Source: Mytilus californianus (taxonomy: Eukaryota). Taken from it: a DNA stretch of 64,000 nucleotides. This document shows positions 22,846 through 50,303 of this stretch, piece by piece; positions within the stretch are counted from its first letter, which is position 1; the number at the start of each line of letters is the position of its first letter. A model generated the notes under the pieces. That model searched no databases. It was given only the letters and a program-made list of their open reading frames with translations, and was not told where the DNA came from. The stretch spans positions 2,542,001 to 2,606,000 of the forward strand of contig NW_026262690.1 of the NCBI RefSeq assembly GCF_021869535.1, read 5' to 3'. The translations under genes were made by a program, and so were the position numbers.

Positions 22846-23768
22846 CACAGTAATACTCGATGTGTTCTTAACACAATTTTGTGTGAGTGTGACAGGTTGC
22901 AAATTTTCCTAAAGTTATGAAATTGAAACTATCACTGGATTCAACACCGGTGAAATTATTTCAGAAAAGGGCCTTGCGTAGATTATGCCATCAGATGGAA
23001 CCGTATCTCGCAAAGAAGAATTGTAACAGGTTAAAATGTTGGAATTACCAGACTGAACAAATGCAGATTAAAGTTTACTACCTTGGTTAATTCTTAATTG
23101 AAATTTATTAACGGTTCAAAGTCAATCTATACGATTTTTTCAGGAGATCAATTAAAATTGGTATTGGTATTTGGTGCTTCTACGCTAAACCCGTAGCGTT
23201 TAGAATTTATAGCAAAGAATAGTTGGCTCGGATTCAAAGCAGTATATCTTATCATTACATTAATATGTAATAAGTACAATAATGCCATATTGTATTTCAT
23301 TGATTTTGTTTTCCTACTTATACAATTTGAAACAAACCCAGTACGATCTAAATCATATAAGCTATAGTTTAGTAATATTCGAAATCCTGTGTACTGGATG
23401 GAAACTTAGTACAATCAAGAATTATCCTGGTACAAATCTTGACATCCCGAGTTCTACTAGTAGATATTAAAATTTCATTTGTTCTGAATTTAAAGTAGTA
23501 TAAATCTGAATTCCTATATGTACCAGTAGAAACTGGAATTCTCGATTGTACCATGGTGATTCTAAGCCCTACATAATTCACATTTTAATTGTAACCTATA
23601 CATAAAGATCATTTCAATGTATGTCATGTATGTTTTTTCAAAAAATGCTTCGTGATCACAATTAGATTTACAATCTAAAACAGATTTCTTTACTTGAATG
23701 GCACTAACTTATGAACAATATTATCCATTCAAAGTGAATCCTGATATAACTTATTTCTTCTTTCCTTT

Positions 23769-26700
23769 CTACGGTTTAACTGTTGGTATTACTTCCTCAT
23801 ATTCCTCTCCTGATTCATTTTTTTCACCTTCAAGTTTTAAATATAAGTGTGTTTGACCTGGATGTTCTACTGGCTTTTCGTAGCCTAGAACTTCTAGCTC
23901 TTGGACATTCTGATAAACGCTAGCTTCTGTATTTCCACTTTTATCAGTGCTGTTTATTACACGTTGTTTTATATTAACATCTTCATATTCCTTCTGTCCT
24001 TCATTACTGTATAAACTGCCTGTATGTTTATCTGTTTGGTCGTCAGCCATCGCCACATACTCCATTTGAGGTCCGACGTCATGAATATTGCTCTCGCCTT
24101 CCATTGGAATGTACTCTGCGTCATATGTATTATCTGATCTCACTCTATCCGTCTCGTTTTGATAAATAGTACTTGTATCTAATGGTTTCTCTTCATCAAT
24201 ATTACAACTGCTTTGCTTAGTTTGTTCATAATGGTTGGGCTTTGATTTCTGTCCAGTTTTGAAAACATCTTTGCTGGTGCCCTTTATCTCTTCACTTGTA
24301 AGAGCTTCATGAGATGGAATGGGGTCAAATTTTCGTTTATGAAATCTGCAATTTAATTGTACAACATGATAACAAATATAAGAATGATTATACCAAAACT
24401 ATATCTTCGTGAAAGATAGAATAAGAATAAGAATGTTTATTGTTCCAATGAAGGGCCCTTGATAGGAAGCATGGAATTTACACACACACAACAATACACC
24501 TTTATTTTGTAAAACTTAAGATATGCCTTTGGTAATATACATGTAGGTAATTTCACACGGATCTGGTACCCTAATACTAAATATTCAAAAAGAAATGAAT
24601 TTGCTTTATTGTAATAATTACACTTCTCAGTAAAAGTCTCTTTTTTTCACTGATCAAGCCGTTGATTTTTTTCTCGTTTGAATTGCTTCACATATTTTCA
24701 TGTCGGGGCCCGTTTAACTGACTACACGATATGGGTTTTGTTCATTGTTTAATGCCATACGGTGACCTATAGCTGCTTGTGCACGTCATTTGGTCTCTAG
24801 TGGAGAGTTGTCTCATTTGCAATCATACCACACCTCCTTATTTTTATATTTATTTAGTTTTTTTCCATATTGTTAAATGGCCATTTTGAACTGTGGTATT
24901 ACTTCGGTCCCTTCTTGCATTGTTTGCAGACTCTTTCGCTACGCCTGTATCATCTGAAGTGACGGTAAGAGTTCCAATCACGAAATTTAATTATTAGGTT
25001 AGGAATTTCGTTATCAGAAATTTCTAAAAACCTTTACTAAATAGTTTCTAAGATACAAAGATTTAGTTTGGACGTTTGCTTGTACATGGACCTACAGATT
25101 TTACGAAGATGTTATAATTCTATTTTGACAATACAAATGTCATTTTAAAAATAAGGAGATGTGGTATGACTGTCAATAAATCGACTATCGAACAATAGAC
25201 CTAAGTACATAAGTGAAAATAGCTATATGACACCGTTCGGCTTTAAAAAACAAAGACTTACTGTAGAGTAAATAAAAAAAAATGATAACAAAATATGAAA
25301 CGAAACAGAAAAAAAAACTATTGTCGTAATTTAAACTAAAATCAAACGTAAATAGATATAAGCAGATGTGGTATGAGTGCCAATGAGACAACTCTCCATC
25401 CAAGTCAAAATTTATAAAAGTAAACCATTATATGTCAAAGTACGGTCTTTAACACGGAGCATTGGCTCACACCGAACAGCAAGCTTTAAAGGGCCCTAAA
25501 AATTACTAGTGTAAAACCATTCAAACGAGAAACCCAACGGTCTAATCTATATAAAAAACGAGAAACGAGAAACACTTATGAACCACATCAACAAACGATA
25601 ACTACTGAACATCAGATTCCTGACTTAGGACAGGTGCAAACAATTGCAGCGGGTTTAAACGGTACCAAACCTTCACCCTTATCTGAAACAATAGTGTAAC
25701 ATCACAACATAGAAGGACACACTATAAAATATCAATTGAAATGGCTTAACTCAATCAAAAGACATATTAACACCAGTAAACATACACTGAACAAATAAAT
25801 TTGATCTATGATACAATGTAAATACAAAATAAATAAACTAAGGGAAGAATAATTAAAGTAACATGTTATACCGCTGTGAAATGTTAAACAATTTAAGAAA
25901 AACTATATGCTTGAACAAAAATATCAGCCATTTGCAATTACTTCAAACACAGGTAAATGAAAATAGTTTTGTTGTTAGGTATACGTGTACAGTTCAAATG
26001 GAGAAAGGAAATATTTCTACAAAATGAATAATTTTGATGTTCATAGTACGAAGAAGTGAAAATTTATAGTAATACTCAACACTTATCAAAGCTGGTATAT
26101 AGACCAGATATAACTCTGAATAACATTAAATAACAATAAAGCATTACAATTAGTATCAAAAGGTCAAATAAACAAGAAAGTACGATTTGAGAGTACTCGC
26201 AGTTACTGACAGCTAGTTAAAAGCCAAAAATAATTAATAATAAAAAATCATGCATCAGAGACTAAAATCAACTAAAACACATCCCAGGGATTTAGTATTT
26301 TAGCGTCATGGACAGTAAATGAAGACATGACTTGTGCAATGCCAAAAATAAATGTATCGACAGGCAGTAGGATAGTTAGGAGTTAAATTCTTTATAGATC
26401 AAAATGAACGTGAGTGTGTCTTTATACATCCCGTTTGAAAAGAATACAAATTTAGTTATGTTTTAATTTGCTGATGACAAAATCGATATAAGTGCCAATG
26501 TAAACTATATTCAAAGATCTAATCACAACGTTGGTAAGATAACCTTTACTAATAAGTTTGTTTAAAGGTTCGATGAGTTTACACGGATCACATAGGGATT
26601 TCCGCGCTTTAAGTACAATATTACCGTAAAATTAAACGTAACTCCTTATTTCTACTTATTTTTATGTAAAAGCTTGATTTCTTCTTATGAATCATATTTC

Positions 26701-29700
26701 ATTAAATTTTCCCAATTGTTTTTGCAGGCGGGCTGAATAAATAGATCCCAACACTACTCTAACCCCTTACATGTGTATACCTTTTACAGATGATTATTGC
26801 CACGGTTATTATAATAACCATGACAACCAAGACACTTCCTGCCACTGCTGCTACTAATGTGACTGAAAATGTAATAACAGTAAGATATAATCAACCTTCT
26901 TTCTACAAATGAATGTTATTTCATCGACATAGAACAAATCAAAATATTTATTGCATATGAATCACGTTTAAGATTTTATTGAAGACTACAAAAATATAAA
27001 ATTGAAACAACTTCTCTTTGTGAAAACAAGCACTCCAAAATTTAATAGGGAAAATGAAAAGTTACACTTTAACCTTTCGGTAAGGAAATATTTATTCTAT
27101 ATTTTATTTTTATTGTTTATTGTTCTTGGTTTTTGTGTATAAGCCAATTTCTGAAAGTGACTAGCTGTCCAGCCTAAATTAGAGGTTAACACACATCATA
27201 ACTATACGACTAATCACAAAAAAAAACAGAGTGAAAATGTAAATGGCATTAATTGTAGTTTCTCTAACATTTTCCTGGTTAAATATATGATTATAAAAAT
27301 AAGAACATGTGGTATGATTGCCAACGAGACAACTATCCACTAGAGACCAAATGACATAGAAGTTAACAACTATAGGTGACCGTTGCTCGTTTTACCTCCC
27401 TAAATGTATTACAATAGATATAAGAAGATGTGGTATGAGTGCCATGAGACAACTCTCCATCCAAGTCAAAATTTATAAAAGTAAATCATTATAGGTCAAA
27501 GTACGGTCTTCAACACGGAGCCTTGGCTCACACCGAACAGCAAGCTATAAAGGGCCCCAAAAATTACTAGTGTAAAACCATTCAAACGAGAAAACCAACG
27601 GTCTAATCTATATAAAAAACGAGAAACGAGAAACACTCATGAACCACATCAACAAACGACAACTACTGAACATCAGATTCCTGACTTAGGACAGGTGCAA
27701 ACAAATGCAGCGGGTTTAAACGTTTTAATGGTACCAAACCTTCACCCTTTTTCTGAAACAATAGTGTAACATCACACAACATAGAAAGACACACTGTGTA
27801 TAATTTGGAGTTTAGTATGACGTTCATTATCACTGAACTAGTATACATATTTGTTTAGGGGCCAGCTGAAGGACGCCGTCGGGTGCGGGAGTTTCTCGCT
27901 GCATTGAAGACCCATTGGTGGCCTTCGGCTGTTGTCTGCTCTATGGTCGGGTTGTTGTCTCTTTGACACATTCCCCATTTCCATTCTCAATTTTACACTA
28001 TAAAATATCAACTGAAATAGCTTAACTCAATCAAAGGACATATTAACACCAGTGAACATACACTGAACAAATAAATTTGACCTATGATACAATGTAAATA
28101 CAAAATAAATAAACTAAGGGAAGAATAATAAAAGTAACATGTTATACCGCTATGAAATGTTAAACAATTTAAGAAAAACAATATGCTCGAACAAAAATAT
28201 CAGCCATTTGCAATTACTTTAAACACAGGTAAATGAAAATAATTGTGTTGTTAGGTATACGTGTACAGTTCAAATAGAGAAAGGAAATATTTTTAAAAGA
28301 CTGCCTAGTCTAACATTAATAAAACACGAAAATTGGGTCCTCCTGCCTCAACTACACGGTCTTTATATAGCATCTCTAAATAAATATAATCCTTTTCGAA
28401 AATTATATCTACTATTGTATATTTTTTAATTGTATTTATTTAAAAAAAAAAAGTAAAAGAAAATACCGAACTCCAAGGTAAATTAAGAAAAAGGAAAGTC
28501 CATAAAATCTGACAAAATCAAATGTTGGATTATATCAACCAACGGAACGAATGGAAAACAACTATCTTTTTCCTAAATTGAAAAGGCATTTTCCGAAGAA
28601 ACGCCCTTAAGGAGTATCTAATACTTCTTTTTTCTTTATTGTTTTACATAGTTTGGTCTTGTGTCTTGTGCCGTTACACTACTGTCCCAGGTTAGTGGAA
28701 GGGTTGGTGCCTTCAAACATGCTTAACCCCGCCACATTCTTTATGTGCCTGTCCCAAGTCAGGAGCCTGTAGTTCATATAATTACTTACATCCACTTCAT
28801 TTGAACTTTGGTGGATAGTTGTCTCATTGGCAATCATACCACATCTCCTTATTTTTATAGAGTAGGAGATTCCTGTCATGTTTACATACAACCATGAAAT
28901 TAGTTTGGACACATTTCGGTATGTTGTCATTGTCCATTTTTTGTGAAAAAAAAATTGTTGAGTTTGTCAGGCAAAATTGATTTTGCAAGTATAATATGTA
29001 ATACAACTTCCTTAACATGTTCAACTTTCATACTTCAGTTGATTATTTAATCCATAAAGTTTTACTTACTGTTTACAGCGTATGTAGCATTGCTGTCTGT
29101 AAAGAATAGTAAAAGAATAGAATTATATACACCCAAAGAATATTTAAAATTTTTTTTTTGCGAAATTAATAACAATACGAAAGCTGCTTATTTTGTCGAT
29201 GTTTATACGCTTATCCCTAAAAGTAATCCACTAATTAAGTTGTATATCTTAGATAAAATTGAGAATGGAAATGGGGAATGTGTCAAAGAGACAACAACCC
29301 GACCATAGAACAGACAACAGCAGAAGGTCACCAACAGGTCTTCAATGTAGCGAGAAATTCCCGCACCCGGAGGCGTCCTTCAGAGCATGCATTCCTTATT
29401 ACATGTAACTATCACTAACTTAACTTCAAAGGGTAATATAAATTCTGTTTCTTTTTTGTTTTTGTTCGATTTATTAACAACTTTTATAGAGCTTGACATT
29501 TTGTGTGGACACCTGTGTAATGGTGGACTGCATGTTACCATAAAGAGTTCGTTTGGAATTATTGTTGTTGGGTTACTGTCTCATTAACGTTATACCAAAC
29601 TTTTTTTCAATTCCACCTGCATCTGAAATCATTTTACTTTTGGTCTTTGAGGATTTGCCTTTTCAGAATATATTATGTATTATCTGGGTGATATTTTTAA

Positions 29701-32700
29701 GTGTCAAAAATCAAACTTCCAATGAAGGTGATAGATTGATCTCTCGCTTGTGTGAAACTCATTTCCTTTCATACATTGAAAACTTAAGTATGTTCTAACA
29801 CTCATATCTTAATTAACTTTAGAAATAATTAAGGTTGATATGAAGGTTGAATATTGTGTTGCATAATTGCTGAAGTAATTGTCCATGATTCTATATAACA
29901 AGTACACATACCGTCTGGAACTATACTATACATTGACACAAATGTTGTATTTTGACCCCCGCATGTTTCATTTCCGTTTCCTGGACAAGGAGAATTACAG
30001 AGTGTCCCGTTGATTTCGGTTTGTGGCGGTTGTTTACTGCAGCTGCAAGTAGCAACAGGATGTGAGTCCATAACCCCTCCGTCTATCTGACCCTTTGACA
30101 CAATAAATTTAAACAAATATAAGTGTCCTCTTTTTTTTTGTCATATTTTTATTAAGTTGAGTTAACAGTAAATAAAATGATAGAATGACCTGAAATTACT
30201 CCCTTTACATATCACATTTGGAGAGATAGATAATACTGTGTTACTTTCCTGTTGCCATTCTGATTTGATGCATTTCATGTGAAAAGAGCAGAAAGTAACA
30301 ACTAAATGTACTATACTCAAATGTCGTAGTATCATATTGACCGACTGAGGTGCGTATGGTGACCAGTAATTTTTCACATCTATGTCCTTTTCTCTTTGAT
30401 AAAAAGTTGTCTCTTTGGCAATAATACCACATCTCCTGATTTTTAAACTAACAATTATTACTGCGAACAATTTATACATGACTTGATCAGACATTTTCAT
30501 TATGAAAAGAAAAAAAAAGAAAAAAATTATAACAGAGATGATGAGTCGGATTTTTAGCGTGAAAGCTCACAATGTAAGTGTCAAGTGTAAATATCATACT
30601 CAAACACATTATTCCGAGACGACTCATCCTTGCTTTGATTTCGAATGCGGCTTGCGCTTGGCAAAAACAACGAATAAAAGTAAAAAAGTCAGAAGTATGT
30701 TCCAGCCAGATATCGAACCCACGACCCCTATCCCGCATTCGAGGCAAACACGCTTCCCAGGAATAGATTACCTTAGATGTATTTTGCAAAACTTTTCGGA
30801 ATTTATTATAAGGTCCTCAATGCTCTTCAACTTCATACTGTATTTGGTCTTTTTAACTTGTTTTATTCGAGCGTCACTCATGAGTCTTTTGTAGACAAAA
30901 CGCGCATCTGGCATACCAAATTATGATAATATAAAAAAAGAAGTGGTGGTATCGTTGTCCATGAGACAACTCTCCACCTGAGACCAAATGAAGTAGAAGG
31001 TTAATAACTATAGGTCACCGTGCGGCCTTCAACAATGACTCAATGAGCAAAACCTATACCGCATAGAAAGCTATAAAAGGCTCCGAAGTGACATATGTAA
31101 AACAATTTAAACGAGAAAACTAACGGACTGGTGTATGAACAAAACAATAAACGAAAAAAACAAACATGAAATACAGTAACAAACAACAATTTATAACTGA
31201 GTTACAAGCTCCGGACTTGGGACAGGCACATGCAGAATGCGGCGGGATGAAAAGTGTTTGCAGGCGCACTAACCCTTCCCCTAATCTGGAACAGTTGTGT
31301 AAGATTACAACATAAGAACAACCTATAAAAACCAGTTAAAAAGGGCTTAACTCATCAGATCAATACAAAGCACAAAAGCAACTAATAAAATCACAAGACA
31401 CAAATTAAAGATCTGAGAAGTTACAGAAAGCTACTTCAAAGCCACTTACAACTAATAAAAAATATCATGTATCTAAGACTAAAATATCAATCAGTTCACA
31501 TCCAACTCCTAATGGATTTAATGTAAAGACATAATTAGCAGTCTAAGAAAAACATGATCTTTTGAATCTCTTAAGCCTAGTATCTTTGATGTGTTTATTT
31601 CCACGAGACCCCATGCTGATGCTTTTGATATTATACAGACAATATAGTATGTTAATGAAGATCGTAAGTTGACCTCCAAATTTCGTTTTATTTTTGTGTC
31701 GTTTTTTGCTGTCTCTTTTGACGTATACCTACATTTCCATTTATAAATTTATACCTTGAACTATATGGATGTGGTGGGGATCTTCATAGACAATAGATAG
31801 AGAGAAGCAATGAAGCCGATTTAAATAGAATAACCTACCGAAGTTGCTATCCAGGTGTAGTGTCGCTCATCACAAAATTTAGAACACATTTCAATCGACA
31901 TATAGTTACTGCTGAAGGATTTGTCCGAATCGAAACCCGTATAGCATCCATGAAACAGGAACAGTAAACCTGGAGTAAAAAATTAAAAAAAAAATCATTT
32001 TTTAATTGTATAGTATTTTGAACAGATATATCATTTTCAGGAAGGGTTTTGAAAAAATACCGGTACTAGTAGAGAGGAAGCCAAATATTTGGATTTAGCC
32101 TTTAATCGAAGGAAATTTCTCTTCAAGACTGGTATTTTTGCCAGTACCCTCCTAAACATGATATATATCTGTTAATTACACCAATAGAGATGGTAAAGTG
32201 AAACATTTTATTTATGATTCCATCATTCTTTCGCTTCAAGTCGTTATTTATCAAAGACAACCACATTGATAAAACACACAAATGACCAAGCATCTCCGTG
32301 ACGGGTAAAAAAAGCATAAATGTATTGTCAAATACCCATACTTAGAGGGTAAAAAAGTCACATCTTTGTGCATATATCCCGGCGAAGGTGAAATATATAC
32401 AATATTCAACGTATAGAAAGACCCAAAGTCTCTAATAGGTATAATTCTAAGCAAGTTATCCTACCAATCAGTTTATTTGGAATAATTGTGACGTTGATAC
32501 AAAGTGTGAACTTGAAAGCGACATATCCTTATACTCTTATCGGAGGCAAATTTTGTCAAAGTTTGAAAAAAAAGAATAATAATCAGAAAAAATACAGTTA
32601 GGTTTTTACGTTTTGGAAAAGGAAAGACCTTAATTTAAAAACAACTACATTGTCAATATACTTGTAAAGGTTTTTCAATATATACAGTATCTTATAAAAT

Positions 32701-34077
32701 TGTAGGTTATGTTTCGATTGTCAATTTGCTTATAAAACACTACCTAAATGTATATTTCATTGTTAAACAAGAAAACACGAAGCAACCGAAACGGTAACAG
32801 AATCCGCCTCTTTCCTATTATCGCCTAGAATGCGAGGAAAAGTTACTTCTTCCTCTCAACCTAGATTAGCGGTTGACGGCCGACTCCCACCCGTACCGTG
32901 ACACCTCTCTACATTAATTTACTTAGTAGTACATGGCTGGAAAGTTGGATATACTACTTGCCTCCGGTACATTGTACATGAATGTAACATATATTCTTTA
33001 AATTATACTCGTCCTACCGAATATATATACATTGTGAATATACACTTTTCACACACTCGCCCACTTTTAAAAAATATATATAACCACTTAAAGAAACTGC
33101 AAACTCCTCCCGCCTACGATATGATATGATATATAGTATATTGTTTTATACTAGTACTTTTCCATTACTCTCCTACTAATTATAAACCCACTTATAAAAT
33201 TTGCCGGCCGATGTTGCCGGGATTAAAAAATGATTACTGCACTTATATTGAGGAATATTGTCCCTCGTAGTATATATCATATTGCACCTGCAGGCTCGTG
33301 CAATGTGATATATTGCTCGTAGTTGCATAGGAGTAGACTGAAAAGGGGGTAAAACTTCTGAAAAAGAACAAGCAAACAAAAATCTATAGGCTACAAGTTA
33401 GCAGTGCTCTCTGTCATTTTCATTTTTTGCTTTCAGTATTTGTTTTCCAGGAAAGTAACCGGGGCAACTGCCTCCCTTCCCCCGCCAGCTCCTATCCACC
33501 TGGCTCGGGACAATATTCCTCAACATCATAACCCTAAAGTTTCTACACATTTGTACTTTTTTTCTGGATATTTGATTTGATTAACATAGGGAAGTTTGAA
33601 AAAAAGGTAGCATATATCATTTTTCCGATATAACATACAGTTCGTTATGCTCTAGTTAAATGCAAAATTTCATTCAAATTTGTGTAATAGGTCATTAACG
33701 TACCTATAGAAATAAACAGTCTATATATTTGTTTTCATAAATTATAATATTCTTTATTTTATAAAAGATTGTTTGTAAACATAAATCAAATCAGATTCAT
33801 ATGATTGTATAAAGTTTCCGTTGGTGTAAGTATTGTATTATCACCATATATTTTTTACAACAATGGTAGTAACTTTCTTTTTGAGTTGACATTTTTCCTA
33901 TCATCAAAACCAAAAGCCCGACATAAAGGCAATTATACAACGTAGTCTGGGTTTTAACATTTGAGAGACTGTAGAAAAGCATATAGGGGAATTCTTTTTC
34001 TGTTTGCTCAATAATTTAAACAACTCTAAAAGAAAAAGCAGTGACCCCGCCTGCAGGAATCTCTTTGTAAAGGGGAC

Positions 34078-34117
<40 letters not shown>

Positions 34118-34922
34118 GCATTGCTAAACGCACAATGACAAATATTTCATGCATATTCAGGACGAGAAAAAATCTCATAGGTAATTTCTGCAAAGTTGGT
34201 TGACCGTGATGAAAAGTGGGGATTTGGACTGCCACTGGAAAATGAGGGTATGTTGGATATCGGAAGGAATGTGGTCTTGCAAAAGGCCACCTACGGAGAT
34301 CCCTCAAAGAGTTGTTGCAATGGTTCTTACATGTGCGCAGAGAGCGTGGCACTCGCCATACACGAAACATTGGATTAAACGTTTCCATATTCCGACCGGA
34401 CGTGGCTGTGTATTCATACATCCTGCACAGACAAACAGACGCCTTTCATTAGCACGATTTTTATGAGTAGATTGGAGGATTCCAGTAATGACCATATTTC
34501 TATACCTAAACCAACCTTTGTGGTTGTAAAGGGGTAGTACCAGATGATATCATTATTTTCGGCGACTACAGTCATAAGGGGTAACACCCAATTTACTTTA
34601 TATTTTTTTTCTTTTAAACTGAAAGTGACAATACCATGGAGTTTTATTGTGCGTTAAGCAAAGCAACAATCAATCAATCAATCAGTCCCCTTTACAAATG
34701 AGGTTCCTGCAGGCGGGGTAACTGCTTTTTCTTTTGGATTTGCTTAAATTATTGAGCAAACAATGAGAGAATTCCCCTATATGCTTTTATGAGGGGTTGT
34801 TGTTTTATATTTAATATTAAACGACATGAACTCTAAAGATTGACATCCCTATACTCACATTTTGACTGTCCGGTGTAAAAAATCAATAATATCAAAGCAA
34901 CAACATAAAAATTCCTTTCCAT
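23769..34922 (-). CDS. WSC-domain type-I transmembrane receptor A with tyrosine-motif-rich tail (~344 aa; ~353 aa if the micro-exon is used)
   Basis: Exons: 34859-34922 (MERNFYVVALILLIFYTGQSK, AT|gtgagt); 31839-31969 (FHGCY..MSIEMCSKFC); 29912-30092 (CSCS..LCNSPCPGNGNETCGG); optional 29596-29622; 26781-26862 (TM LVAAVAGSVLVVMVIIITVAIII); 23769-24345 (tail, 11 Tyr). All junctions are GT-AG with compatible phases 1,0,1,2; total 1035 nt is divisible by 3. Confidence 0.85.
25353..26016 (+). mobile_element. Young dispersed repeat (class unresolved, MITE- or HINE-like), copy 1 of 4
   Basis: Near-identical copies at 27415-28292, 57924-58570 and 62403-62687 (gatgtggtatgagtgccaatgagacaactctccatccaagtc...). 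Confidence 0.85.
27415..28292 (+). mobile_element. Same young repeat, copy 2, carrying a nested ~200-bp insertion (~27797-27995) bounded by an ACACT duplication
   Basis: Comparison with uninterrupted copies (gacacactataaaat) shows ACACT on both sides of the insert. Confidence 0.8.
33248..33523. mobile_element. MITE-like element with perfect 17-bp TIR (TTGAGGAATATTGTCCC)
   Basis: 33248-33264 is the exact reverse complement of 33507-33523. Confidence 0.75.
33975..34788. repeat. Fold-back structure: ~150-bp inverted arms (33975-34136 and 34646-34788) containing (GATT)n, enclosing a SINE-like core
   Basis: The arms align as reverse complements (aaaagcatataggggaattc..ccccgcctgcaggaa..gtaaaggggactgattgatt). 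The core resembles copies at ~56780-57160 (+) and ~58870-59060 (-). Confidence 0.85.
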
Positions 34923-35589: not shown

Positions 35590-35780
35590 TAGATATGTCA
35601 ATACTCCTCATATTGTTGCTCCGATTCATTTGTAGTTTACGAAATAGCAGCAGTATCCTCAACTTTGCAATTGAAATGTACATATAGATGATCTGAATTT
35701 TCAATTCCCACATGAATCTCATACGCAAGCTCGTCTGACTCACTGTTGAACAAGACTTCTATAACATTCAGACTTCGACC
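35590..35780 (-). pseudogene. Decayed fragment of a third receptor tail exon
   Basis: Translates EVLFNSESDELAYEIHVGIENSDHLYVHF..IS*TTNESEQQYEEY*, matching the YExP-x7-HLY..EEYE cassette of receptors A and B. Contains an in-frame stop and is truncated by a repeat at 35780. Confidence 0.75.
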
Positions 35781-36366
35781 TTTTATAGCTGACTATGCGG
35801 TATGGGTTTTTTTGCTTATTGTTGAAGGCCGTACGGTGACCTATAGTTGCTAACTTCTATGTCATTTGTTCACTTGTGGAGAGTTATCTAATTGGCAATC
35901 ATACCCCATCTTCTTATTTTTACCGTGAGGGCATTCCGGTATTATGCTGCCGCAGAACTTTCTACCCACGTGACTTGCGTTTTTGACTGATAACCGAACG
36001 TATTGCGTATGATTACGCGGATATTATCGAGTGTAAAATAACATTCCTTATCGCTTGTTATATATTAATTTCATCAATAAATATTCATGAAAATAATTTT
36101 TAAGAACATAGATAAATGATATGAAAATGTTTTATCGTGAGAAATATATAAACGCATGCGGAAGAATATCTCAAGAACGTTTTGTAACAAACGTGGGAAA
36201 ATATGAATGCCTACTCAAATCCAATTTATTAGAAAAACGAATTATTACAGAAGAGTGTCCACCATGCACTTGCACTGCACTATCATTAGAATAGTAGAAT
36301 AGAATGATATACAAATGGATGAAAATTATATATAACTGTTATACAAATATTAATATAATAAATAAC

Positions 36367-39346: not shown

Positions 39347-40420
39347 TTATTTATAAACATTGTTTGTGCATATGTTCACTAAAATTATGTGCTTAAACAG
39401 TAAAATTGTCCTACAAATCTTCGCTCTTCTTTTCAACTTTTGTCTTCCTGTCTTCAAAGCCTCACGTTCACGCAAGATGCACTCACAAACTTTATATAAT
39501 AGTCCGAAAAGAAAACATGTGTTTACTCCAATAATAAAATACAGAAACAACACAAATTCCCAAATATTTGTTTCGGGATAAACATTGGTAGAATGCTTAG
39601 GTTTCGATAGATCACTGAATTTTGTGGACAGTTTCCTCAGCAGAATATTGACATTCTGATCAGCTTTGAATGTGCAAAACTCTCTAAACGAATATACGGA
39701 AGCTTTATTTTGAATTCGGTAAGACTACGAAACATTGACCTTTTCTTTTGAATAAAATACATTTAAGGCAAAGTACCACAAAGATAAAAAGTAAAATCCT
39801 TTTTTTTTCAGTTTTCGCCATTTCAAGGACGTAAGTAAATTTAAATAAAGGTACACATAAACTATATACCAACCAATCCCGATAGCATAGTAAACAAAAA
39901 CAATGGTTTCCTTTTCGTAAGTTTTTAATTTTGTCCAAAGAAGTAACTTCCTGATTAATTCATATCACGAATTATTTCCGTTGTTCGTTTTATCTGTACA
40001 CTTGCTAGTACAGTGTACTTTTAATTTGTTCCTTGTCGTTTCTGTACATTTGTCTCGTTTCTTTTGATTTGTCTCTTTTTCTTTCTGTAGATTTGTGTCG
40101 TTGCATTTGATTTGTCTCTTTTTCTTTCTGTAGATTTGATACGTTGCTTTTGATTTGTCTCTTTTTCTTTCTGTAGATTTGTGTCGTTGCTTTTGATTTG
40201 TCTCTTTTTCTTTTTGTAGATTTGTGTCGTTGCTTTTGATTTGTTTCTTTTTCTTTCTCTAGATTTGTGTCGTTGCTTTTGATTTGTCTCTTTTTCTTTC
40301 TGTAGATTTGTGTCGTTGCTTTTGATTTGTCCGTTGTGGTTTCTGTAGATTTGTGTCGTTGCTTTTGATTTGTCCGTTGTGGTTTCTGTACATTTGTGTC
40401 GTTGCTTTTGATTTGTCCGT
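39347..40420 (-). pseudogene. Decayed intronless ORF: K/R/Q/T-rich repeat N-terminus followed by three hydrophobic segments
   Basis: A single frame over ~358 codons with only three internal stops (40261, 39967, 39727). Hydrophobic runs: TIVFVYYAIGIGWYIVYVYLYLNLL, GFYFLSLWYFALNVFY and IWEFVLFLYFIIGVNTCFLFGLLY. Confidence 0.6.
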
Positions 40421-40435
40421 TTATTCTTTTCTCTA
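40035..40435. repeat. 43-bp minisatellite (TTCTGTAGATTTGTGTCGTTGCTTTTGATTTGTCTCTTTTTCT)n, ~9 copies
   Basis: Period of 43 measured (40085, 40128, 40171; 40343, 40386). Confidence 0.9.
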
Positions 40436-40931: not shown

Positions 40932-43900
40932 TTACTGTGGCATCATAAATTCATATTCTTCCTCTGTGTTTTCAAGGACTTGTGTTTCACTTTTTATGGT
41001 ATCTTCTTCCGAGTCGGCATTAAGCGTTGAATACAAATGTGGTGCGCTTTCTGTTCTCGTCGGAATTTCGTATTCTTCAGATTTATGTTCATCAATATTG
41101 TAATAAAGCTCATCATTAGCATTTGCCTTTTGATTTAATTTTTTTTCGACTGTGTCAGAGTCTGCATTAATATTCATATATTTTTCGATACTTTTATTTC
41201 TATATATATTTCTGACAGCTCTGTCCCTCTCGATTTCCTCAACAGTTTCGTATTTGGCGTCGTCTTGGCCATAAGTGTTATTCTTCATCCCTGATTCATT
41301 AGTACATATGTTGATCGACTGTTCATTATTACTTTTGTCCTTATAGACAACAGTCTCATAAAGTTCTCTTTCGCTGATATTACTATTACTATGATCTGTG
41401 TGGACATAATAGTTAAGCGTTCCTTTACTTTCTGATTTCATGTCACGTGACTTTATGTCATTGTTTTTGTCTAATACTAAACTCTTACATTTAAGGTTAG
41501 ATGTTGTCGTAAAAGAACGTGTTTGATATCTGAAAGAAATAAGAAAACGAAGAAAACAGTAGTACAGACCAAGGACTGACAACAAATATGGTACTGAAAC
41601 AGAATTTCCTCCTCATTGCTATACCTATTTATTTTATCCATCTGTTCGTATCTTTTGAAATTTATATAAGCCAGCCCAGTAGCCAGTATTTCGGTACTGG
41701 CATGAAAAAAACGGATATTGTATTATTTAAATTTGCTGTAACAAAATTTGGAAATTATTTCAAATTCAGAAATATATCTCCCTCATGCAATGCCCGGCTT
41801 TGGCTATACTTTTGGTCTTTTTAGGTTTATAAGCCCATTAATTTTTTTAAATAAATTATGGGTTTTCAAATATTTTGGCCTCCAGCATCACTAAAGAAAC
41901 ATTTAATGTCGAAATGTGCATCTGGTGGAGAGAAAAATTGGTAAGGTTAATGTTATTACTACCACTGGGTCAATAACTCTGCTGGTGGACTGTTAGTCCA
42001 AGGGTGTTACATCAGCCCATGAGCCAGTACTTCGGTTATGACATGAAAAAAACGGATATTGTGTAATGAAAATTTGTTGTAACAAAATTTTGAAAATTAT
42101 TTTAAATTCATGACTATATCTCCCTCATACAAACTCGGATTCTTTGTCCAACTTTGGCTATACTTTTGGTCTTTTAAAGTTTATAAGCTCTTTATTTTTT
42201 TAATAAGTTTTGGATTTTAAATATTTTGGCCTCGAGCATCACTGAAAAGACATTTATTGTCGAAATGCACGTCTGGTGCAGAAAAATTTGTACCGTTAAT
42301 GCTGTTATACGTTACATTTATAAACGTTTTATATTGCATGTTGAAAGGTTCTGTGTAGTTAGACCATTAAGGAATATTTAGATAACAGATGTCAAATATG
42401 TGTTTGATATTGTTTTTGATTATTTTTTATTTCCTTTTTCAAAGCCTAAATTTGTACCAGTTTGAAAGTTTTCTCATATTGTGTGATGTAAAGGAATCTC
42501 TTTTAATATTCTTCAAGGGGTGAAATTTTGCCCTTTTTTCTTATATGATATATTATAATATTAATCTATTAATTTTGCCAGTTTGCAACTTTGCGGTAAC
42601 AGATAACCCAAGTTTCTGTGACATCCCTGCACTGTGACCATTAAGGCATATGTGTTAACTCCCCCTACACTGTGTCCAGTGACCTAGACCAGTGTTCGAG
42701 CGATTACTTATCAATATTTAATAACCTCATATAATGTTTTCTTACCTTCTGTAAAGAATCAGAATAACAACGGTTATCACCATGACACCAATAACTGCAA
42801 AGACTGCTCCTACCACTATACCTATCGTATTGCATGAAGTAAAGACGATGACTTCGATGTTAATTTATTGTTCATAATATATATATATGATATTTTCCTA
42901 TTTGTGAAAAACTGTGTATGAAGCTTATATGCTCAGCACATATACATTAAAATCAACAGCTCAAGGAAAATTGACAAAGCATTTTAGAGAATATTTTTTT
43001 TTGGTAAACTATGAAAGAATTGCCATCTTTTGATGAAGCCTACAATACTATTCAAAAACGTTTCCCTTCAATATATTAATAGGCAGTATATATATCAAAC
43101 AATATTTTATATATTCTAAGAAAGGCTATTATTGCTTTTGGTTAATTGTTTTGTACATAAATCAGGCCGCTAGTTTTTCGTTTGAATTGTTTAATATGTG
43201 TAATTTCGTGGCCTTTTAAAGCTTACTATACTCTATGTGTTTTATTCATTGTTGAAGGCTGTGCGGTGATCTAGTATTATTGCTGTACGGTGATCTAGTA
43301 TAATTGATAACTTCTACGTCATTTAGTCTCCGGTGGAGAGTTGTCTCATTGGCAAAATACGATATCTTCTTATTGTTATATCCAAGAACTGACAGTATGT
43401 TTTTTCTTTGAGTTAAGCAGGATTTTTTCATGTGTAGTAATATATATATTCCATGTTTTACTAACAGGGTCAGAATCTAAGTTTTAAATCCTACTTAAAA
43501 TTGAATATTTAAGAATATATATCATACATCAAAAAGTCGATTTTTTTTTCATTTCTGAAAAATCTTATTGAAAATGGCCCTGATAGAGTTAAGGAAAATT
43601 GGACCTGTCTCTTTCAGGAAAAATTCGTAAAACTTATTTATTGGCCCTTTTGTGAAATAAATTCATGGAAAATTCTCCCTTTCTCTACATCATAAATTTT
43701 ACGTTATCGAGAAAGTGTATATTATAAGTGGGAGGTTAGGCTAGCTATAAAACCAGGTTTAAATTACTAGTATCATTTTTTTCGGGAAATGTCTGTTCTA
43801 AGTCAGGAATATGACAGTTGTTTTCCATTCGTTCCCTTGGGTGATAAAGTCTAACGTTTGATTTTGTCAGTTTTTATGGACTTTGCCATTTTTAAATTTA

Positions 43901-46900
43901 CCTTGTAATTCGATATTTTTGTCATACTATTTTTCCGTGTATACTTATAAACAGGATATTATAATTAAACATGACATCACTTACGATCATTATTTCCTGT
44001 GTTCTTGTAACCTATAAAACATATATTTATAATGGTAATATTTCCATTTACACTGTATACTCTACTTTTCACATTACACAAAACAGAAATTTTCTTCAAT
44101 TAACTTTGATATGAAAACAAAAACAGCCTCCAAAAACACAAGTTACTTTAAAGCAAATGATGTCAGTAATGTGTATACTTTAATGCTTGAACATCCACAT
44201 TTCGGACAAAAAATAGGATGAAAATAAAAAATAAATATCTGTTGTAAAAAGATAACACCTATATGCTTATCTACGACCCAGCTTCAGTTCCACTTGTTCA
44301 TCTTAACTAAGAGTTGAACTGTTCTAGTTTCGGTATATGCTTTTGATTTGTGTCAAACATTCTGCAGATATGTTGATTACAAGATAGTAAGAAAAAAGGT
44401 GTCCAAAAGCTATATATTCAAATGTCATTGTACAAATAGTGTTTGGGAAATACCCAAAAAAACCACCGCCTTCATATACGTACATACCACGCATAGCCAC
44501 ACCATGAACAGAGTAAATTGTTTGGTTGTAGCCACCGCATATTTCATCCGGGCTTTTTGGACATGGAAAATTACACAAGCTTTCATTCACTTTATTCATA
44601 AGAGTTTCATTACTACAGCTACAAATGCCATGTGCCTCATAAGCATTTGTCAGAAAAAGTGCGCCAGTTATCTTGACCTTGAATTAAGAAAAAAAACAGA
44701 TAAGTAATATGTTATGAAGTAATATTGAAACAAATCAATTTTTATATTTGTTATACAATGTATCTGTTACAGGTTCAAACCTAGATTTTAAGGAGATAAA
44801 ATCATATGTAAGACATTTGCTTATACCAGCAATAAAAATGACTATACTGAACTTTTATTATATATAGCTTTAACATATTTTAAATTAAATTTAGAATAGG
44901 ATAAAAAGACATGAGAGGTTCTCTTGTGGCATATATCAAAGATTCTTACACAATTATATAGTGCAGAAAACATTTATCTTTCAACAAGTCACGAATATTT
45001 ATGAAACGAACACAAAATTAATTTCATGATATTGAAATTTAATAACTTTACGATATTAAGAATTGTGATAAAATCGTTTAATTGGTAAACGATAACTTAC
45101 AGACAACGCAGCTAGGCTATAGTGACCTACTTTACAAAATTCTATACAGATGGAACTGGACATAAATGTTTTATTCACATACGAGGTATTTACTTCAACA
45201 TTCAGATAACATCCATAGTACCTAAAACTTGATCCTGTTAAAAAAATAAAACAAAAAAGCAAAACATTATTTGTTCCATTCGCAGCAATTTTATACTACA
45301 CTTTATTTTTCATTGTTAGAGATGATATTGTGAACTATAAAGTAATTTATATACAATTACGTTGTTTTATTCTTACGCTCTGTGGTTTCGTTTTATTACC
45401 GATTCGCCTTATATTATGTACTAATTGCAATGGGTCAAATGTTTCATTGTTTGCTGCTTTTCCCACACCCATTAACGATATGCACTGTTCATATCGTTGC
45501 AGTAGTTTTATGAATGAATGTGGTCCTGTCAATAAATGCTACAAATAGCCTTTTTATACTAGTGGGCCATAATATATGTTATAATATTTTGGATAGTGAT
45601 GAAAATCACGGGTGGTGCGATACTTTTTCCAGGTGTATATAAGATGTAATTTTCACTAAAACTGTAAGTTTACAAATTGAATGTGTTATCCTCTGGTATA
45701 ACCATATTATATTTTTCTATACCTTTTGTAATCTTATGGTCAACGTAAAAGATTGGCATAGGCTTACAAAAGAAGTTAACCTCGCTATATATTAATGAAC
45801 ATGTCAGAAAATCTGTAGTTTTTGTTTTGTCTTTTCTTAATATTTTTTGGTCATTATTATACTAAAAATAAAAAGCAAGGTGTATTCAAATAACTACAAA
45901 AAAAATGATGATTTGTAAAAAGTAAAATAAAAAGAATACCGAACTCCAAGGAAAATTCAAAACAGAAAAGTCCCTGTTCAAATGGCAAAATCAAAAGCTG
46001 AAACACATCAAACGAATGGAAAACAACTGTCACCCGACCCGGCGCAGGCATTTCCCTACGCAGAAAATTGTGGATTAAATCTGGCCAATCCCCTCACTTG
46101 TATGACAGCATAAAATTCCATTATATTGACAACAATGTGTGAACAAAACAAACAGACATAATAGGTAAAAATGTCATAAATATGTACAGCAGTCCACATT
46201 GTTATAATGTTAATCACTTAGTCTATAAAACAAAGAAATATGCCAACAAAGAAAACAAAATGGCATATAGACAAAGCACATAGCAAAAATGAAAGACAGA
46301 AATACAAAAAATGACCATAGCACAATAACACAATGACGGGACCGTATAAGAACCGAGCCATGCCAAAGGATATTACCAAAATAGGACTAAACAGTAAAGG
46401 TTAATTATTTACAAAGACGAATAAAAGAACACTATAACACGTAATTAAGATGATAAACAATCTATACACCAAGACCATCATGTATTATTTGTGAAGTTAA
46501 TGCGGAATATTTATCTACAAGGTCTTGGTTTTTTCCGATGAACTTTTTTAGAAAAAGGACGAGACGTTCTTTGACATGACCCTAGTTCATCAACTCTCTG
46601 CTCAGATACTGGTGGCGTTTTATAAAGTCTGAGTAGCAGCTGAAAGCTCTTGGATACCGAATAAGTTGGGAAATGTATATCCCATATGCAGGTGAAATTG
46701 GTATATTGCTACTAAGGTGAGAGAAATTGATAATTTCAAAATTAAAATCGTCTCGTTTGTCATAGATTCTGGTACTGAGACGACCGCGTATGTCAAATTC
46801 GAGGTATAAGTCTTAAAATGTGGCGGAGGAAGCCGTGTTTGTTATTTCTTTAATTTCTAGTTCTAGAGGATATATTAATGGAACCCAATCAGAAAAGTTT

Positions 46901-49900: not shown

Positions 49901-50303
49901 ATTGGAAGAAGAGGCTTGTGTATGTTTATGATCCACCAATGTTATTCAATTTGATTAAAGTTAAGGGGGCAACCATTTAACTTCAAGAGGGGGGGGGGGG
50001 GTTATGTTTTTTGTATGTGTCAGAAATTTTTTTCTTAGTTTTTCGACGCTATCAATCAAATTATTTTTTTTCAAAATTTAACGCTATAAGGTATGGGGAA
50101 AATCTGGATTCAGAATATTTTATTTTTGTCATCTGCTTGACCACAATATTTTTTTCATCGAATTGGTGATCAGATTATTTTTTTAGGGAAAACCATAACA
50201 CCCCCCACATACTATACAAAGTAGTGTAAATCTATCCAGTCTTACCTTGTAAGGAAATTACACAACACAAGTATAACGTACACAATGTGTAGATGAAAGT
50301 CAT
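40932..50303 (-). CDS. WSC-domain type-I transmembrane receptor B with tyrosine-motif-rich tail (~351 aa; ~360 aa with the micro-exon)
   Basis: Exons: 50246-50303 (MTFIYTLCTLYLCCVISLQ, AG|gtaaga); 45101-45234 (YYGCY..MSSSICIEFC); 44488-44677 (CSCS..ESLCNFPCPKSPDEICGG); 43985-44011 (27-nt, tag|..|gtaagt); 42746-42821 (TM IVVGAVFAVIGVMVITVVILILY); 40932-41529 (tail, 14 Tyr). Intron phases are the same as in receptor A. Confidence 0.88.
46430..47135 (-). mobile_element. Penelope-like retroelement RT, 3' part (decayed)
   Basis: GIPMGTN, FTFSYIDDVLSINN (YIDD catalytic motif) and the downstream IYDKRDDFNF-type segment. Confidence 0.85.
47265..47860 (+). mobile_element. Second Penelope-like RT 3' fragment, inverted relative to 46430-47135
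   Basis: LDLYLEFD..STRIYDKRDDFNFEIINFPHLS..YGIYISQL..RACSSYSDFVKRHQCLSRKL. Confidence 0.85.
48001..48665. repeat. Tandem duplication of a dispersed repeat (gcgtccgaagcgcttttctggatttaccttcatcagg family)
   Basis: The motif recurs at 48027, 48286 and 48639; family members also at ~52725, ~54830, ~63370-63560 and ~21550-21720. Confidence 0.8.
49035..49690 (-). mobile_element. Penelope-like RT, 5' part (decayed)
   Basis: DKYGVVPADKASNNIIFV, LYWIPK.HK, MWILK and IKTFDFSTLYTTIPH motifs across frameshifted ORFs. Confidence 0.85.

What the first reader, a model, noticed from the sequence alone, without database searches (positions are those of the whole stretch)
23769..24345. Conserved phosphotyrosine spacing code in otherwise unalignable tails
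A and B share Y-(+16)-YxN-(+8)-Y-(+24/25)-YxN[VI]-x7-YExP-x7-HLYxxL...EEYE. A reads YVAM/YSN/YEDV/YQNV/YEKP/HLYLKL/YEEV; B reads YETV/YRN/YMNI/YYNI/YEIP/HLYSTL/YEFM. Known SH2 preferences: YxN for Grb2, YxxM for PI3K p85, YxxP for Crk/Abl/Nck-type. SVYQNV in A fits the ITIM consensus, and YxxV/I-x7-Y has ITAM-like spacing. Conserved spacing implies selection on tandem-SH2 geometry. Motif differences (two YxxM plus an ITIM in A, one YxxM in B) hint at paired receptors with different outputs.
Basis: partly seen in the sequence, partly recalled or inferred. Interest (0 to 1): 0.75.

Follow-up and report, generated by a model that had tools for sequence, protein, structure and literature searches.

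The report
Mussel WSC receptors with phosphotyrosine-docking tails

Summary
The stretch 23769-24345 (minus strand) is the last exon of a six-exon gene, A (353 aa: signal peptide, WSC-like ectodomain, one TM helix, 192-aa tail). Its tandem paralogue B (360 aa) ends at 40932-41529.

- **Shared pattern:** the tails share the stated tyrosine pattern. Alignment score is z = 8.6 over shuffles and falls to z = 1.2 when Tyr is masked.
- **Third clade:** sequences from vent-site metagenomes and unnamed runs keep YxN +8 Yx[ND][IV], then YxN[VI] +11 YExP +13 HLYxxL. The longer spacers vary (22-27 and 14-26).
- **Selection:** among Mytilus orthologues, motif codons have dN/dS of 0.05-0.11, against 0.47-0.66 for the rest of the tail.
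- **Expression:** gene A is transcribed and spliced in three RNA-like runs.

- SH2-type docking (Grb2/Drk-type YxN, Crk/Nck-type YExP, p85-type YxxM) fits what is conserved.
- The ITIM -2 residue is not conserved.
- The "ITAM" second half has an invariant Pro at +3.
- The two genes are not paired receptors.
- Selection on spacing is not demonstrated.

Best reading: a mytilid-restricted, kinase-less WSC receptor or scaffold that works like LAT or NTAL. Phosphorylation is untested. The scan's first stage had also noted the tandem WSC-TM family on this same window (s1-340037).

The parts
23769..24345 (-). Gene A, exon 6: cytoplasmic tail (192 aa) and stop codon TAG. This is the finding's stretch.
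   Evidence: Translation. The RNA-like contigs of runs X1-X3 cover 23700-24345 and splice 24345|26781 with GT..AG on the minus strand. It is identical to the M. californianus protein LOC127737285.
23790..24059 (-). Conserved motif block of tail A: YVAM, YSN, YEDV, YQNV, YEKP, HLYLKL, EEYEEV.
   Evidence: Motif table. dN/dS of motif codons is 0.05-0.06, against 0.47-0.53 for the rest of the tail.
26781..26862 (-). Gene A, exon 5: transmembrane helix.
   Evidence: Joints 24345|26781 and 26862|29070 in contigs of three runs. tblastn with the M. edulis and M. coruscus orthologues.
29070..29096 (-). Gene A, exon 4: 27-nt juxtamembrane mini-exon with N-glycosylation sequons.
   Evidence: The donor at 29070 is given by the RNA joint. 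The acceptor was chosen by open frame and match to orthologues.
29912..30092 (-). Gene A, exon 3: C-terminal half of the WSC-like domain.
   Evidence: Pfam WSC E = 0.0009 on this exon alone. Exon model.
31839..31969 (-). Gene A, exon 2: N-terminal half of the WSC-like domain.
   Evidence: tblastn. Exon model.
34859..34922 (-). Gene A, exon 1: start codon and signal peptide.
   Evidence: tblastn with P0003 residues 1-22, 86% identity. Exon model.
40932..41529 (-). Gene B, exon 6: cytoplasmic tail (about 198 aa) and stop.
   Evidence: Translation. Orthologues P0006/P0012, P0013 and P0015. Exon model.
40944..41252 (-). Conserved motif block of tail B: YETV, YRN, YMNI, YYNI, YEIP, HLYSTL, EEYEFM.
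   Evidence: Motif table. dN/dS of motif codons is 0.09-0.11, against 0.57-0.66 for the rest of the tail.
42746..42821 (-). Gene B, exon 5: transmembrane helix. The acceptor is predicted only.
   Evidence: The acceptor AG used in three other species reads AT here, and a new in-frame AG lies 12 nt downstream.
43985..44011 (-). Gene B, exon 4: 27-nt mini-exon.
44488..44677 (-). Gene B, exon 3: C-terminal half of the WSC-like domain.
   Evidence: Pfam WSC E = 0.00018..
45101..45234 (-). Gene B, exon 2: N-terminal half of the WSC-like domain.
   Evidence: Pfam WSC E = 0.0017..
50246..50303 (-). Gene B, exon 1: start codon and signal peptide.
   Evidence: tblastn with the N-terminus of P0013, 73% identity over 22 aa..
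35604..35819 (-). Possible decayed remnant of a further tail copy between B and A: YEIH-x7-HLY...QQYEEY-stop, with in-frame stops. Weak evidence.
   Evidence: tblastn E = 0.2-0.6. Frame view. A 28-nt DNA match of 86% to the EEYEEV region of A, E = 0.05.

Best explanation
**What it is.** A and B are tandem paralogues of a mytilid-restricted family of type-I membrane proteins. Each has a signal peptide, one WSC-like (putative carbohydrate-binding) ectodomain with 8 Cys, a short glycosylated stalk, one TM helix and an acidic tail of about 190 aa that is predicted to be disordered. Neither has a kinase domain.

**How it most likely works.** The tail is a string of short linear tyrosine motifs held by selection inside freely drifting linkers:
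- two or three YxN sites (Grb2/Drk-type);
- one YExP (Crk/Nck/Abl-type);
- at least one YxxM (PI3K p85-type);
- HLYxxL;
- an acidic C-terminal EEYE[EDFA][VM].

After ligand-driven clustering, a cytosolic Src- or Syk-type kinase would phosphorylate these tyrosines. The tail would then nucleate a multi-adaptor complex. That is how the transmembrane adaptors LAT and NTAL work, and how the tail of a receptor tyrosine kinase works.

**Shown.** Gene structure, transcription and splicing of A, homology of the tails, motif conservation, and site-specific purifying selection.

**Inferred.** Phosphorylation, the identity of the binding partners, glycan binding by the ectodomain, and the biological role.
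For: **Gene models.** Both genes have six exons, all with GT..AG boundaries, matching intron positions and intact ORFs.

**Transcription.** Spliced contigs of 1.7-2.7 kb in three runs join the tail exon to the TM exon and to the mini-exon. The B orthologue P0006 comes from a 1452-nt spliced contig.

**Synteny.** B lies upstream of A on one M. coruscus contig, on the same strand.

**The similarity is carried by tyrosine.** z = 8.6 falls to 1.2 when Tyr is masked.

**Conservation across three clades.** 21 columns are invariant and 6 of them are Tyr (Fisher p = 2.8e-4). The others include the +2 Asn, the +3 Pro and the H-L of HLY.

**Selection.**
- Motif codons: dN/dS 0.05-0.11.
- Rest of the tail: 0.47-0.66.
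- Whole tail: 0.35-0.45.
- Ectodomain: 0.24-0.49.

**Disorder proxies.** Mean hydropathy is 0.36, below the charge-hydropathy boundary of 0.44. 72% of residues are disorder-promoting.

**Readers exist.** At least 41 SH2 exon hits in this genome pass Pfam's cut-off.

**Literature.** pYxN is the Grb2-family motif, and three such sites drive cooperative assembly on LAT (PMC6669380). The fly homologue Drk reads pYxNx on Sevenless at LpYANEG, which resembles LYSNEG in A (PMC11203457).
Against: - No data show that any of these tyrosines is phosphorylated or binds an SH2 domain.
- SH2-class assignments from 3-4 residue motifs are degenerate. Several sites also fit the YxxPhi sorting signal.
- The WSC match is just below Pfam's gathering score (22-26 bits against 27.8), and the AlphaFold model was uninformative (mean pLDDT 35).
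- Raw RNA-seq from the genome's own study showed almost no coverage of the tail (depth 0-1), so expression may be low or tissue-specific.
- The motif set for the dN/dS partition was chosen from paralogue conservation. That is independent of orthologue divergence, but it is not a blind choice.
Confidence: 0.58

Rival explanations
1. A and B are paired immune receptors with different outputs. A carries an ITIM (SVYQNV) that recruits SHP-type phosphatases. An ITAM-like YxxV/I-x7-Y pair is read by a tandem-SH2 kinase (Syk/Shark), and the spacing is held by tandem-SH2 geometry.
For: - SVYQNV in this genome and SVYKNV in the third clade fit [S/I/V/L]xYxx[I/V/L].
- The Tyr-to-Tyr distance of 11 between YxN[VI] and YExP is invariant in 16 sequences and lies within the ITAM range of 10-12.
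- There is a precedent. Amphioxus BbLcLRR is an LRR+WSC+TM receptor whose tail tyrosines are phosphorylated by Lck and recruit SHIP1 and SHP1/2 (PMC8211107).
Against: - The -2 residue is G, D or E in M. coruscus, in M. edulis and M. trossulus, and in all B sequences.
- The conserved positions are +2 Asn and +3 V/I, which is a Grb2-type signature.
- The second half of the 'ITAM' has Pro at +3 in all 16 sequences.
- Both paralogues carry the same motif set. The ectodomains are only about 35% identical. Neither TM helix has a charged residue for an activating partner.
- The long spacers vary (22-27 and 14-26).
Confidence: 0.1
2. The tyrosine motifs are not phospho-docking sites. They would be trafficking signals (YxxPhi for AP-2 or other clathrin adaptors), or aromatic contact points for some constitutive partner. 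The family would then be a cargo or endocytic receptor for a glycan ligand.
For: - YVAM, YEDV, YQNV, YLKL and YEEV all fit YxxPhi, as the sequence shows directly.
- Single-pass lectin-like receptors often carry such signals (general knowledge, not tested here).
Against: - YxxPhi does not explain the invariant Asn at +2 at two sites, or the invariant Pro at +3 where a bulky hydrophobic residue would be required.
- Seven or more conserved tyrosines is far more than sorting needs.
- Most sites have Glu or Asp just upstream, as kinase substrates do.
Confidence: 0.17
3. There is no function in the pattern. The shared tyrosines and spacings are just what remains of common ancestry in two slowly decaying tails.
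For: - The invariant short spacers are only 8-13 residues long. By a rough count from the alignment, the chance of no indel there is about 0.05-0.15.
- Some third-clade copies carry in-frame stops or have lost the HLYxxL motif.
Against: - dN/dS at motif codons is 0.05-0.11, against 0.47-0.66 elsewhere in the same exon.
- Both ORFs are intact in at least four species each.
- A is spliced and transcribed.
- Tyr is about 13-fold enriched among invariant columns.
Confidence: 0.05

Closest known systems
Transmembrane adaptor proteins LAT and NTAL/LAB (vertebrate)
   Same: Single-pass membrane protein without enzymatic domain. Long disordered acidic tail. Several pYxN (Grb2-family) sites plus sites of other SH2 classes. 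On LAT, multi-site cooperative assembly is documented (PMC6669380).
   Different: - No sequence homology. The exhaustive profile search found only mytilid-type sequences.
- LAT and NTAL have almost no ectodomain and a juxtamembrane CxxC palmitoylation motif.
- Here there is a WSC-like ectodomain of about 110 aa and no conserved juxtamembrane Cys.
- This is a functional analogy only.
Amphioxus BbLcLRR (LRR + WSC + TM receptor with tail tyrosines)
   Same: Invertebrate single-pass receptor with a WSC domain outside and tyrosine motifs inside. Its tyrosines are experimentally phosphorylated by a Src-family kinase and recruit SH2 phosphatases (PMC8211107).
   Different: - BbLcLRR is 699 aa with LRRs and three ITIM-like tyrosines.
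- The mussel proteins have a lone WSC-like domain and 10-14 tyrosines, dominated by YxN and YExP.
- No homology of the tails was found.
Yeast Wsc1-3 cell-wall stress sensors
   Same: Same overall layout: signal peptide, WSC domain, stalk, one TM helix, cytoplasmic signalling tail (general knowledge).
   Different: Yeast tails are short and signal through Rom2/Rho1, not phosphotyrosine. The stalk is a long Ser/Thr-rich rod. Homology is at most limited to the WSC fold.
ITIM/ITAM immunoreceptors (e.g. KIR, PIR-B, Fc receptor gamma chain; Drosophila Draper)
   Same: Kinase-less receptors that signal through tail tyrosines. One site fits the loose ITIM consensus in this species.
   Different: The defining positions are not conserved (ITIM -2) or are incompatible (Pro at +3 in the would-be ITAM). 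See the membership tests.
Sevenless C-terminal Drk site (Drosophila)
   Same: The pYxNx site read by the invertebrate Grb2 homologue is LpYANEG. Tail A has LYSNEG and the third clade has VYANEN (PMC11203457).
   Different: Sevenless is a receptor tyrosine kinase that phosphorylates itself. The resemblance is a six-residue motif, not homology.

Membership tests
ITIM-bearing inhibitory receptor | Consensus [S/I/V/L]-x-Y-x-x-[I/V/L], kept among relatives | tested here: not met
   The residue at -2 is S in this genome's A and in the third clade, G in M. coruscus, D in M. edulis and M. trossulus, and E in all B sequences. The conserved positions are instead +2 Asn and +3 V/I.
ITIM-bearing inhibitory receptor | Phosphorylation-dependent recruitment of SHP-1/2 or SHIP | not testable with these tools
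   Needs phosphopeptide pull-downs or cell assays.
ITAM | YxxL/I-x6-8-YxxL/I | tested here: not met
   In YxN[VI]-x7-YExP the spacing fits. However, the second motif has Pro at +3 in 16 of 16 sequences, and the first has Val in A and in the third clade. YExP to HLYxxL is Tyr-to-Tyr 13, outside the 10-12 range.
Paired activating/inhibitory receptors | Near-identical ectodomains, with one long inhibitory tail and one short tail plus a charged TM residue | tested here: not met
   The WSC exons of A and B are 33-38% identical. Both tails are about 190 aa with the same motif set. Neither TM helix has a charged residue.
WSC domain (Pfam PF01822) | Match to the family model above the curated cut-off | tested here: inconclusive
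   The full-length domain match (model positions 1/2-82 of 82) scores E = 1e-5 to 2e-4 but only 22.2-25.8 bits against the 27.8 cut-off. The nearest ESM Atlas clusters are all WSC, at scores of 0.84-0.85, which is lead level only. UniRef names the M. edulis and M. coruscus proteins 'WSC domain-containing'.
WSC domain (Pfam PF01822) | Eight conserved cysteines | tested here: met
   Eight Cys lie between the signal peptide and the stalk in both models, including the ...C-x-C... and C-G-G landmarks. This can be read from the sequences.
WSC domain (Pfam PF01822) | WSC fold | tested here: inconclusive
   The AlphaFold2 model from a 9-row alignment had a mean pLDDT of 35. Only the TM helix reached 66-73.
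LAT/NTAL-type transmembrane adaptors | Very short ectodomain and juxtamembrane CxxC palmitoylation motif | tested here: not met
   The ectodomain is about 110 aa. Only this species' A has a single Cys at the membrane boundary (IIIC-KRF). The orthologues have Tyr there.
LAT/NTAL-type transmembrane adaptors | Disordered tail with multiple pYxN sites and no catalytic domain | tested here: met
   There are three or more YxN per clade, two of them with invariant Asn. No Pfam domain was found in the tail. Phosphorylation itself was not tested.
LAT/NTAL-type transmembrane adaptors | Sequence homology to the vertebrate families | tested here: not met
   A profile search of 1.84 billion representatives gave 5 hits. 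All were the A, B or third-clade sequences.

The most novel reading that the evidence does not exclude
A mytilid-specific glycan sensor. The lone WSC ectodomain would detect a microbial or matrix carbohydrate. The kinase-less tail would couple it directly to Ras/MAPK, PI3K and actin pathways through a LAT-like signalosome. The exactly invariant 8-, 11- and 13-residue spacings would be needed for bidentate or cooperative reading by dimeric Grb2/Drk or by adaptor pairs. This would be an independently evolved 'transmembrane adaptor with its own sensor' in invertebrate immunity.
Probability: 0.15. Interest if true: 0.6.

Novelty: new variant of a known kind. Interest (0 to 1): 0.4.

Why it matters
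- **A testable candidate.** Bivalves lack adaptive immunity and rely on large, poorly characterised receptor repertoires. A small receptor that joins a carbohydrate-binding-type ectodomain to a multi-site phosphotyrosine scaffold would be a compact entry point into mussel signal transduction.
- **A teaching case.** It shows short linear motifs under strong selection (dN/dS about 0.05-0.1) inside a tail that otherwise drifts (about 0.5-0.7).
- **An annotation lesson.** The current RefSeq model for this species (205 aa) starts inside the TM exon and misses the ectodomain.
- **Limits.** The family is narrow and nothing has been tested at the bench, so the immediate impact is modest.

Tried and rejected
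- **Own-genome searches.** Tail A alone found only itself. The A+B profile and the third-clade protein found only A and B. No further paralogue was detectable, though this tool is a lower bound.
- **Other WSC exons.** Weak WSC-exon hits on contig C143 were fetched (40 kb). They showed no Tyr-rich tail exon nearby and were dropped.
- **Structure.** The AlphaFold2 model of the M. edulis orthologue was too poor to use (mean pLDDT 35), so no fold search was run.
- **ESM Atlas on the tail.** It returned only unnamed mollusc clusters.
- **Pfam on the tails.** No family was found.
- **Literature.** No paper on this family turned up.
- **Third-clade organism.** It could not be named. Its records are hydrothermal-vent metagenomes (Manus Basin study PRJEB15554) and unnamed runs. 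Vent mytilids are an inference. No TM or WSC exon was found on its contigs, so its full architecture is unknown.
- **Reads for gene B.** None were laid, because the single read-laying run went to gene A.
- **Complex prediction.** It was not used, because phosphotyrosine cannot be modelled there.
Full report
**Where we are.** The window is AT-rich animal DNA (GC about 0.33). The best protein match to the finding's frame is 'uncharacterized protein LOC127737285 [Mytilus californianus]', identical over the exon-encoded part. The assembly has 1.65 Gb in 175 contigs. I take it to be M. californianus or something extremely close to it.

**The observation.**
- Translating 23769-24347 on the minus strand gives an open frame of 192 codons ending in a stop.
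- A six-frame search for HLYxxL finds the second tail, B, at about 40.9-41.5 kb on the same strand.
  - A: YVAM +16 YSN +8 YEDV +24 YQNV +11 YEKP +13 HLYLKL +14 EEYEEV.
  - B: YETV +16 YRN +8 YMNI +25 YYNI +11 YEIP +13 HLYSTL +26 EEYEFM.
- BLASTP aligns the two tails at 23% identity, E = 4e-6.
- In a shuffle test the global score is 8.6 SD above the mean. Nine Tyr-Tyr matches are seen against 3.1 +/- 1.6 expected.
- With Tyr masked the score drops to z = 1.2.
- So the detectable similarity is carried by the tyrosines.

**What the genes are.**
- Orthologues from M. edulis (P0003, 360 aa), M. coruscus, M. trossulus and M. galloprovincialis gave full-length templates.
- Using them with tblastn and splice-site logic I built both models.
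- Gene A (353 aa): exons 34922-34859, 31969-31839, 30092-29912, 29096-29070, 26862-26781 and 24345-23769.
- Gene B (360 aa): exons 50303-50246, 45234-45101, 44677-44488, 44011-43985, 42821-42746 and 41529-40932.
- All boundaries are GT..AG, and the two genes share the same six-exon plan.
- Each protein has a signal peptide, a domain with 8 Cys, a short stalk with N-glycosylation sequons, one uncharged TM helix, a basic stop-transfer stretch and the tail.
- The 8-Cys domain matches Pfam WSC over its whole length, but just under the curated cut-off (22-26 bits against 27.8; E down to 1e-5). I therefore call it WSC-like.
- Feature-based look-alikes are all WSC clusters, at lead level only.

**Transcription.**
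- In three runs of one study, contigs of 2676, 2613 and 1739 nt cover 23700-24345. They skip to 26781-26862 and skip again to 29070, with GT..AG ends on the minus strand.
- These runs therefore hold spliced RNA. Gene A is expressed with the tail exon joined to the TM exon.
- About 500 nt of contig lie upstream of the TM exon, so the ectodomain exons are very likely on the same transcript. The 205-aa RefSeq model, which starts inside the TM exon, is too short.
- Raw RNA-seq from the genome's own study gave a depth of only 0-1 on the tail.
- For B, a 1452-nt contig encodes the 349-aa M. coruscus-type protein. A gene spanning more than 9 kb can only fit there as spliced RNA.

**How wide the family is.**
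- A profile of eight A and B tails was searched against 1.84 billion representative proteins. It returned five hits: the A and B clusters, plus two sequences of a third clade (P0009, E = 7e-21; P0010).
- A word-based search with P0009 added nine more variants.
- Their records are hydrothermal-vent metagenomes and unnamed runs. One study is from the Manus Basin.
- The simplest reading is DNA of vent-dwelling mytilids. That is an inference.
- This genome has no third-clade gene. P0009 hits only A (35% identity, E = 5e-9) and B.
- The third clade mixes A-like features (SVYKNV, HLYLKL, a basic C-terminus) with B-like ones (HSNSNI-ELYE, C-terminal YExMMP). It may therefore resemble the state before the duplication.
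- In M. coruscus, B lies upstream of A on one contig and the same strand. The tandem pair therefore predates the split of these Mytilus species.

**Does the spacing hold in further members?** Across 16 sequences:
- YxN to the next Tyr is +8 in every one. The first Tyr is His in three B sequences, yet the +2 Asn is kept.
- YxN[VI] to YExP is +11 in every one.
- YExP to HLY is +13 in twelve and +14 in one. The motif is deleted in three third-clade variants.
- The long spacers are not fixed. They are 22, 24, 25, 26 or 27 before YxN[VI], and 14, 21-23 or 26 before the C-terminal EYE.
- The Tyr at -16 is missing from the third clade.
- From the 9-row alignment I count about seven indel events between A and B in about 200 columns. 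The chance that none falls in the 48 columns of the fixed blocks is roughly 0.15, or about 0.05 when the third clade is included.
- Fixed spacing is thus real but not, by itself, strong evidence for selection on geometry.

**Selection on the motifs.**
- In the three-clade alignment, 21 columns are invariant and 6 of them are Tyr. Tyr makes up 6% of the tail (Fisher p = 2.8e-4).
- The other invariant columns include the +2 Asn of two YxN sites, the Pro of YExP, the H-L of HLY and the Glu residues around the last Tyr.
- I codon-aligned the tail exons of four species per gene, using DNA fetched.
- The 40 motif codons have dN/dS of 0.05-0.06 (A) and 0.09-0.11 (B), for this species against the edulis group. 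The other ~150-158 codons have 0.47-0.53 and 0.57-0.66.
- The whole tail averages 0.35-0.45 and the ectodomain 0.24-0.49.
- The motif set was defined from the paralogue comparison and tested on orthologue divergence, so the test is not circular.
- This is the strongest evidence that the tyrosine motifs are functional short linear motifs in a disordered, drifting tail. Mean hydropathy is 0.36 against a boundary of 0.44, and 72% of residues are disorder-promoting.

**What the motifs say.**
- The conserved positions are those that define SH2 classes.
- pYxN is the Grb2-family signature, and three such sites on LAT drive cooperative assembly (PMC6669380).
- The fly homologue Drk reads pYxNx on Sevenless at LpYANEG (PMC11203457). 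Tail A has LYSNEG.
- YxxP for Crk/Nck/Abl-type SH2 domains, YxxM for p85, and acidic EEYE[EI]-like sites for Src-family SH2 domains are textbook assignments that I did not test.
- The genome encodes many SH2 domains, with at least 41 exon hits above the Pfam cut-off.
- Every clade keeps three or more YxN, one YExP and at least one YxxM. A has two internal YxxM (Y[IM]PM and YVAM), while B and the third clade have one at the C-terminus.

- *ITIM.* SVYQNV fits only in this species and in the third clade. The -2 residue is G, D or E elsewhere.
- *ITAM-like.* The second motif has Pro at +3 in all 16 sequences, which the consensus does not allow.
- *Paired receptors.* The ectodomains are about 35% identical. 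Both tails are long with the same motifs. Neither TM helix has a charged residue.
- These parts of the interpretation are not supported.
- Nearest experimental precedent: an amphioxus LRR+WSC+TM protein whose tail tyrosines are phosphorylated by Lck (PMC8211107). It shows that such a WSC-bearing receptor can signal through tail tyrosines, but it is not homologous in the tail.

**Verdict.** The family is an uncharacterised, mytilid-restricted, kinase-less WSC-like receptor with a multi-site tyrosine docking tail. It works most like a LAT- or NTAL-type scaffold without being a member of that family. Phosphorylation, partners and ligand remain to be shown. No paper on it was found. The scan's first stage had independently noted the tandem WSC-TM family on this same window (s1-340037), and my gene models agree with that span.

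Noticed in passing
window 35604-35819 (-): Between the 3' end of gene B and the start of gene A, one frame reads ...YEIH-x7-HLYVHF...ESEQQYEEY-stop with two in-frame stops. It has the same YExP-x7-HLY spacing as the family, and an 86% match over 28 nt to the EEYEEV region of A (E = 0.05). It may be a decayed third tail copy. The evidence is weak.
   Followed up: partly
window 23769-23771 (-): Gene A ends at a TAG where M. coruscus, M. edulis and M. trossulus have AAG (Lys) followed by KGKKK and a stop. This species has lost the basic six-residue C-terminus through a nonsense change. The contigs of three RNA-like runs show no difference at this place.
   Followed up: yes
window 42821-42835 (-): The acceptor AG of B's TM exon used in M. 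coruscus, M. galloprovincialis and M. edulis (ttcag|GCAAT) reads ttcaT here. A nearby T-to-A change creates a new in-frame AG 12 nt downstream. The predicted protein lacks four juxtamembrane residues (NTIG). This was not checked with RNA.
   Followed up: partly
window 26781-34922 (-), against protein P0001: The RefSeq model for gene A in M. californianus (LOC127737285, 205 aa) starts at a Met inside the TM exon and omits the signal peptide and WSC exons. These exons are intact in the window, and about 500 nt of spliced contig lie upstream of the TM exon.
   Followed up: partly
loci L020 (nt 800-1408) and L023 (nt 1429-2034); proteins P0021-P0023, P0025: The third-clade copies from vent-site metagenomes are heterogeneous. 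One contig has two in-frame stops in the tail exon. Several variants have an 11-residue deletion that removes HLYxxL. One copy carries a tandem triplication of the C-terminal MMPVKNVKKHV.
   Followed up: partly
window 1833-3350 (-), 14729-16132 (+), 60168-61559 (-): Three long single-exon open frames (464-506 aa) encode LRR proteins (LRR_8 E = 1e-20 to 1e-37, with an LRRNT and Cys-rich C-caps). They flank the WSC pair. No TM segment lies in the same frame.
   Followed up: no
window 39968-40455 (-): Overlapping open frames rich in K/R/T/Q come from a tandem repeat (units like ...KSNDTNLQKEKETNQKQRHKSTERKRDKSKATTQIYRKKKRQI...) just downstream of gene B. It lies inside the stretch another first-stage note called a decayed two-ORF unit (s1-340129).
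   Followed up: no
window 25300-25700, 27300-28100, 28700-28900, 29100-29500: The introns of gene A hold highly repeated elements with very high summed depth in all four runs, and many loose ends. They look like transcribed interspersed repeats.
   Followed up: no
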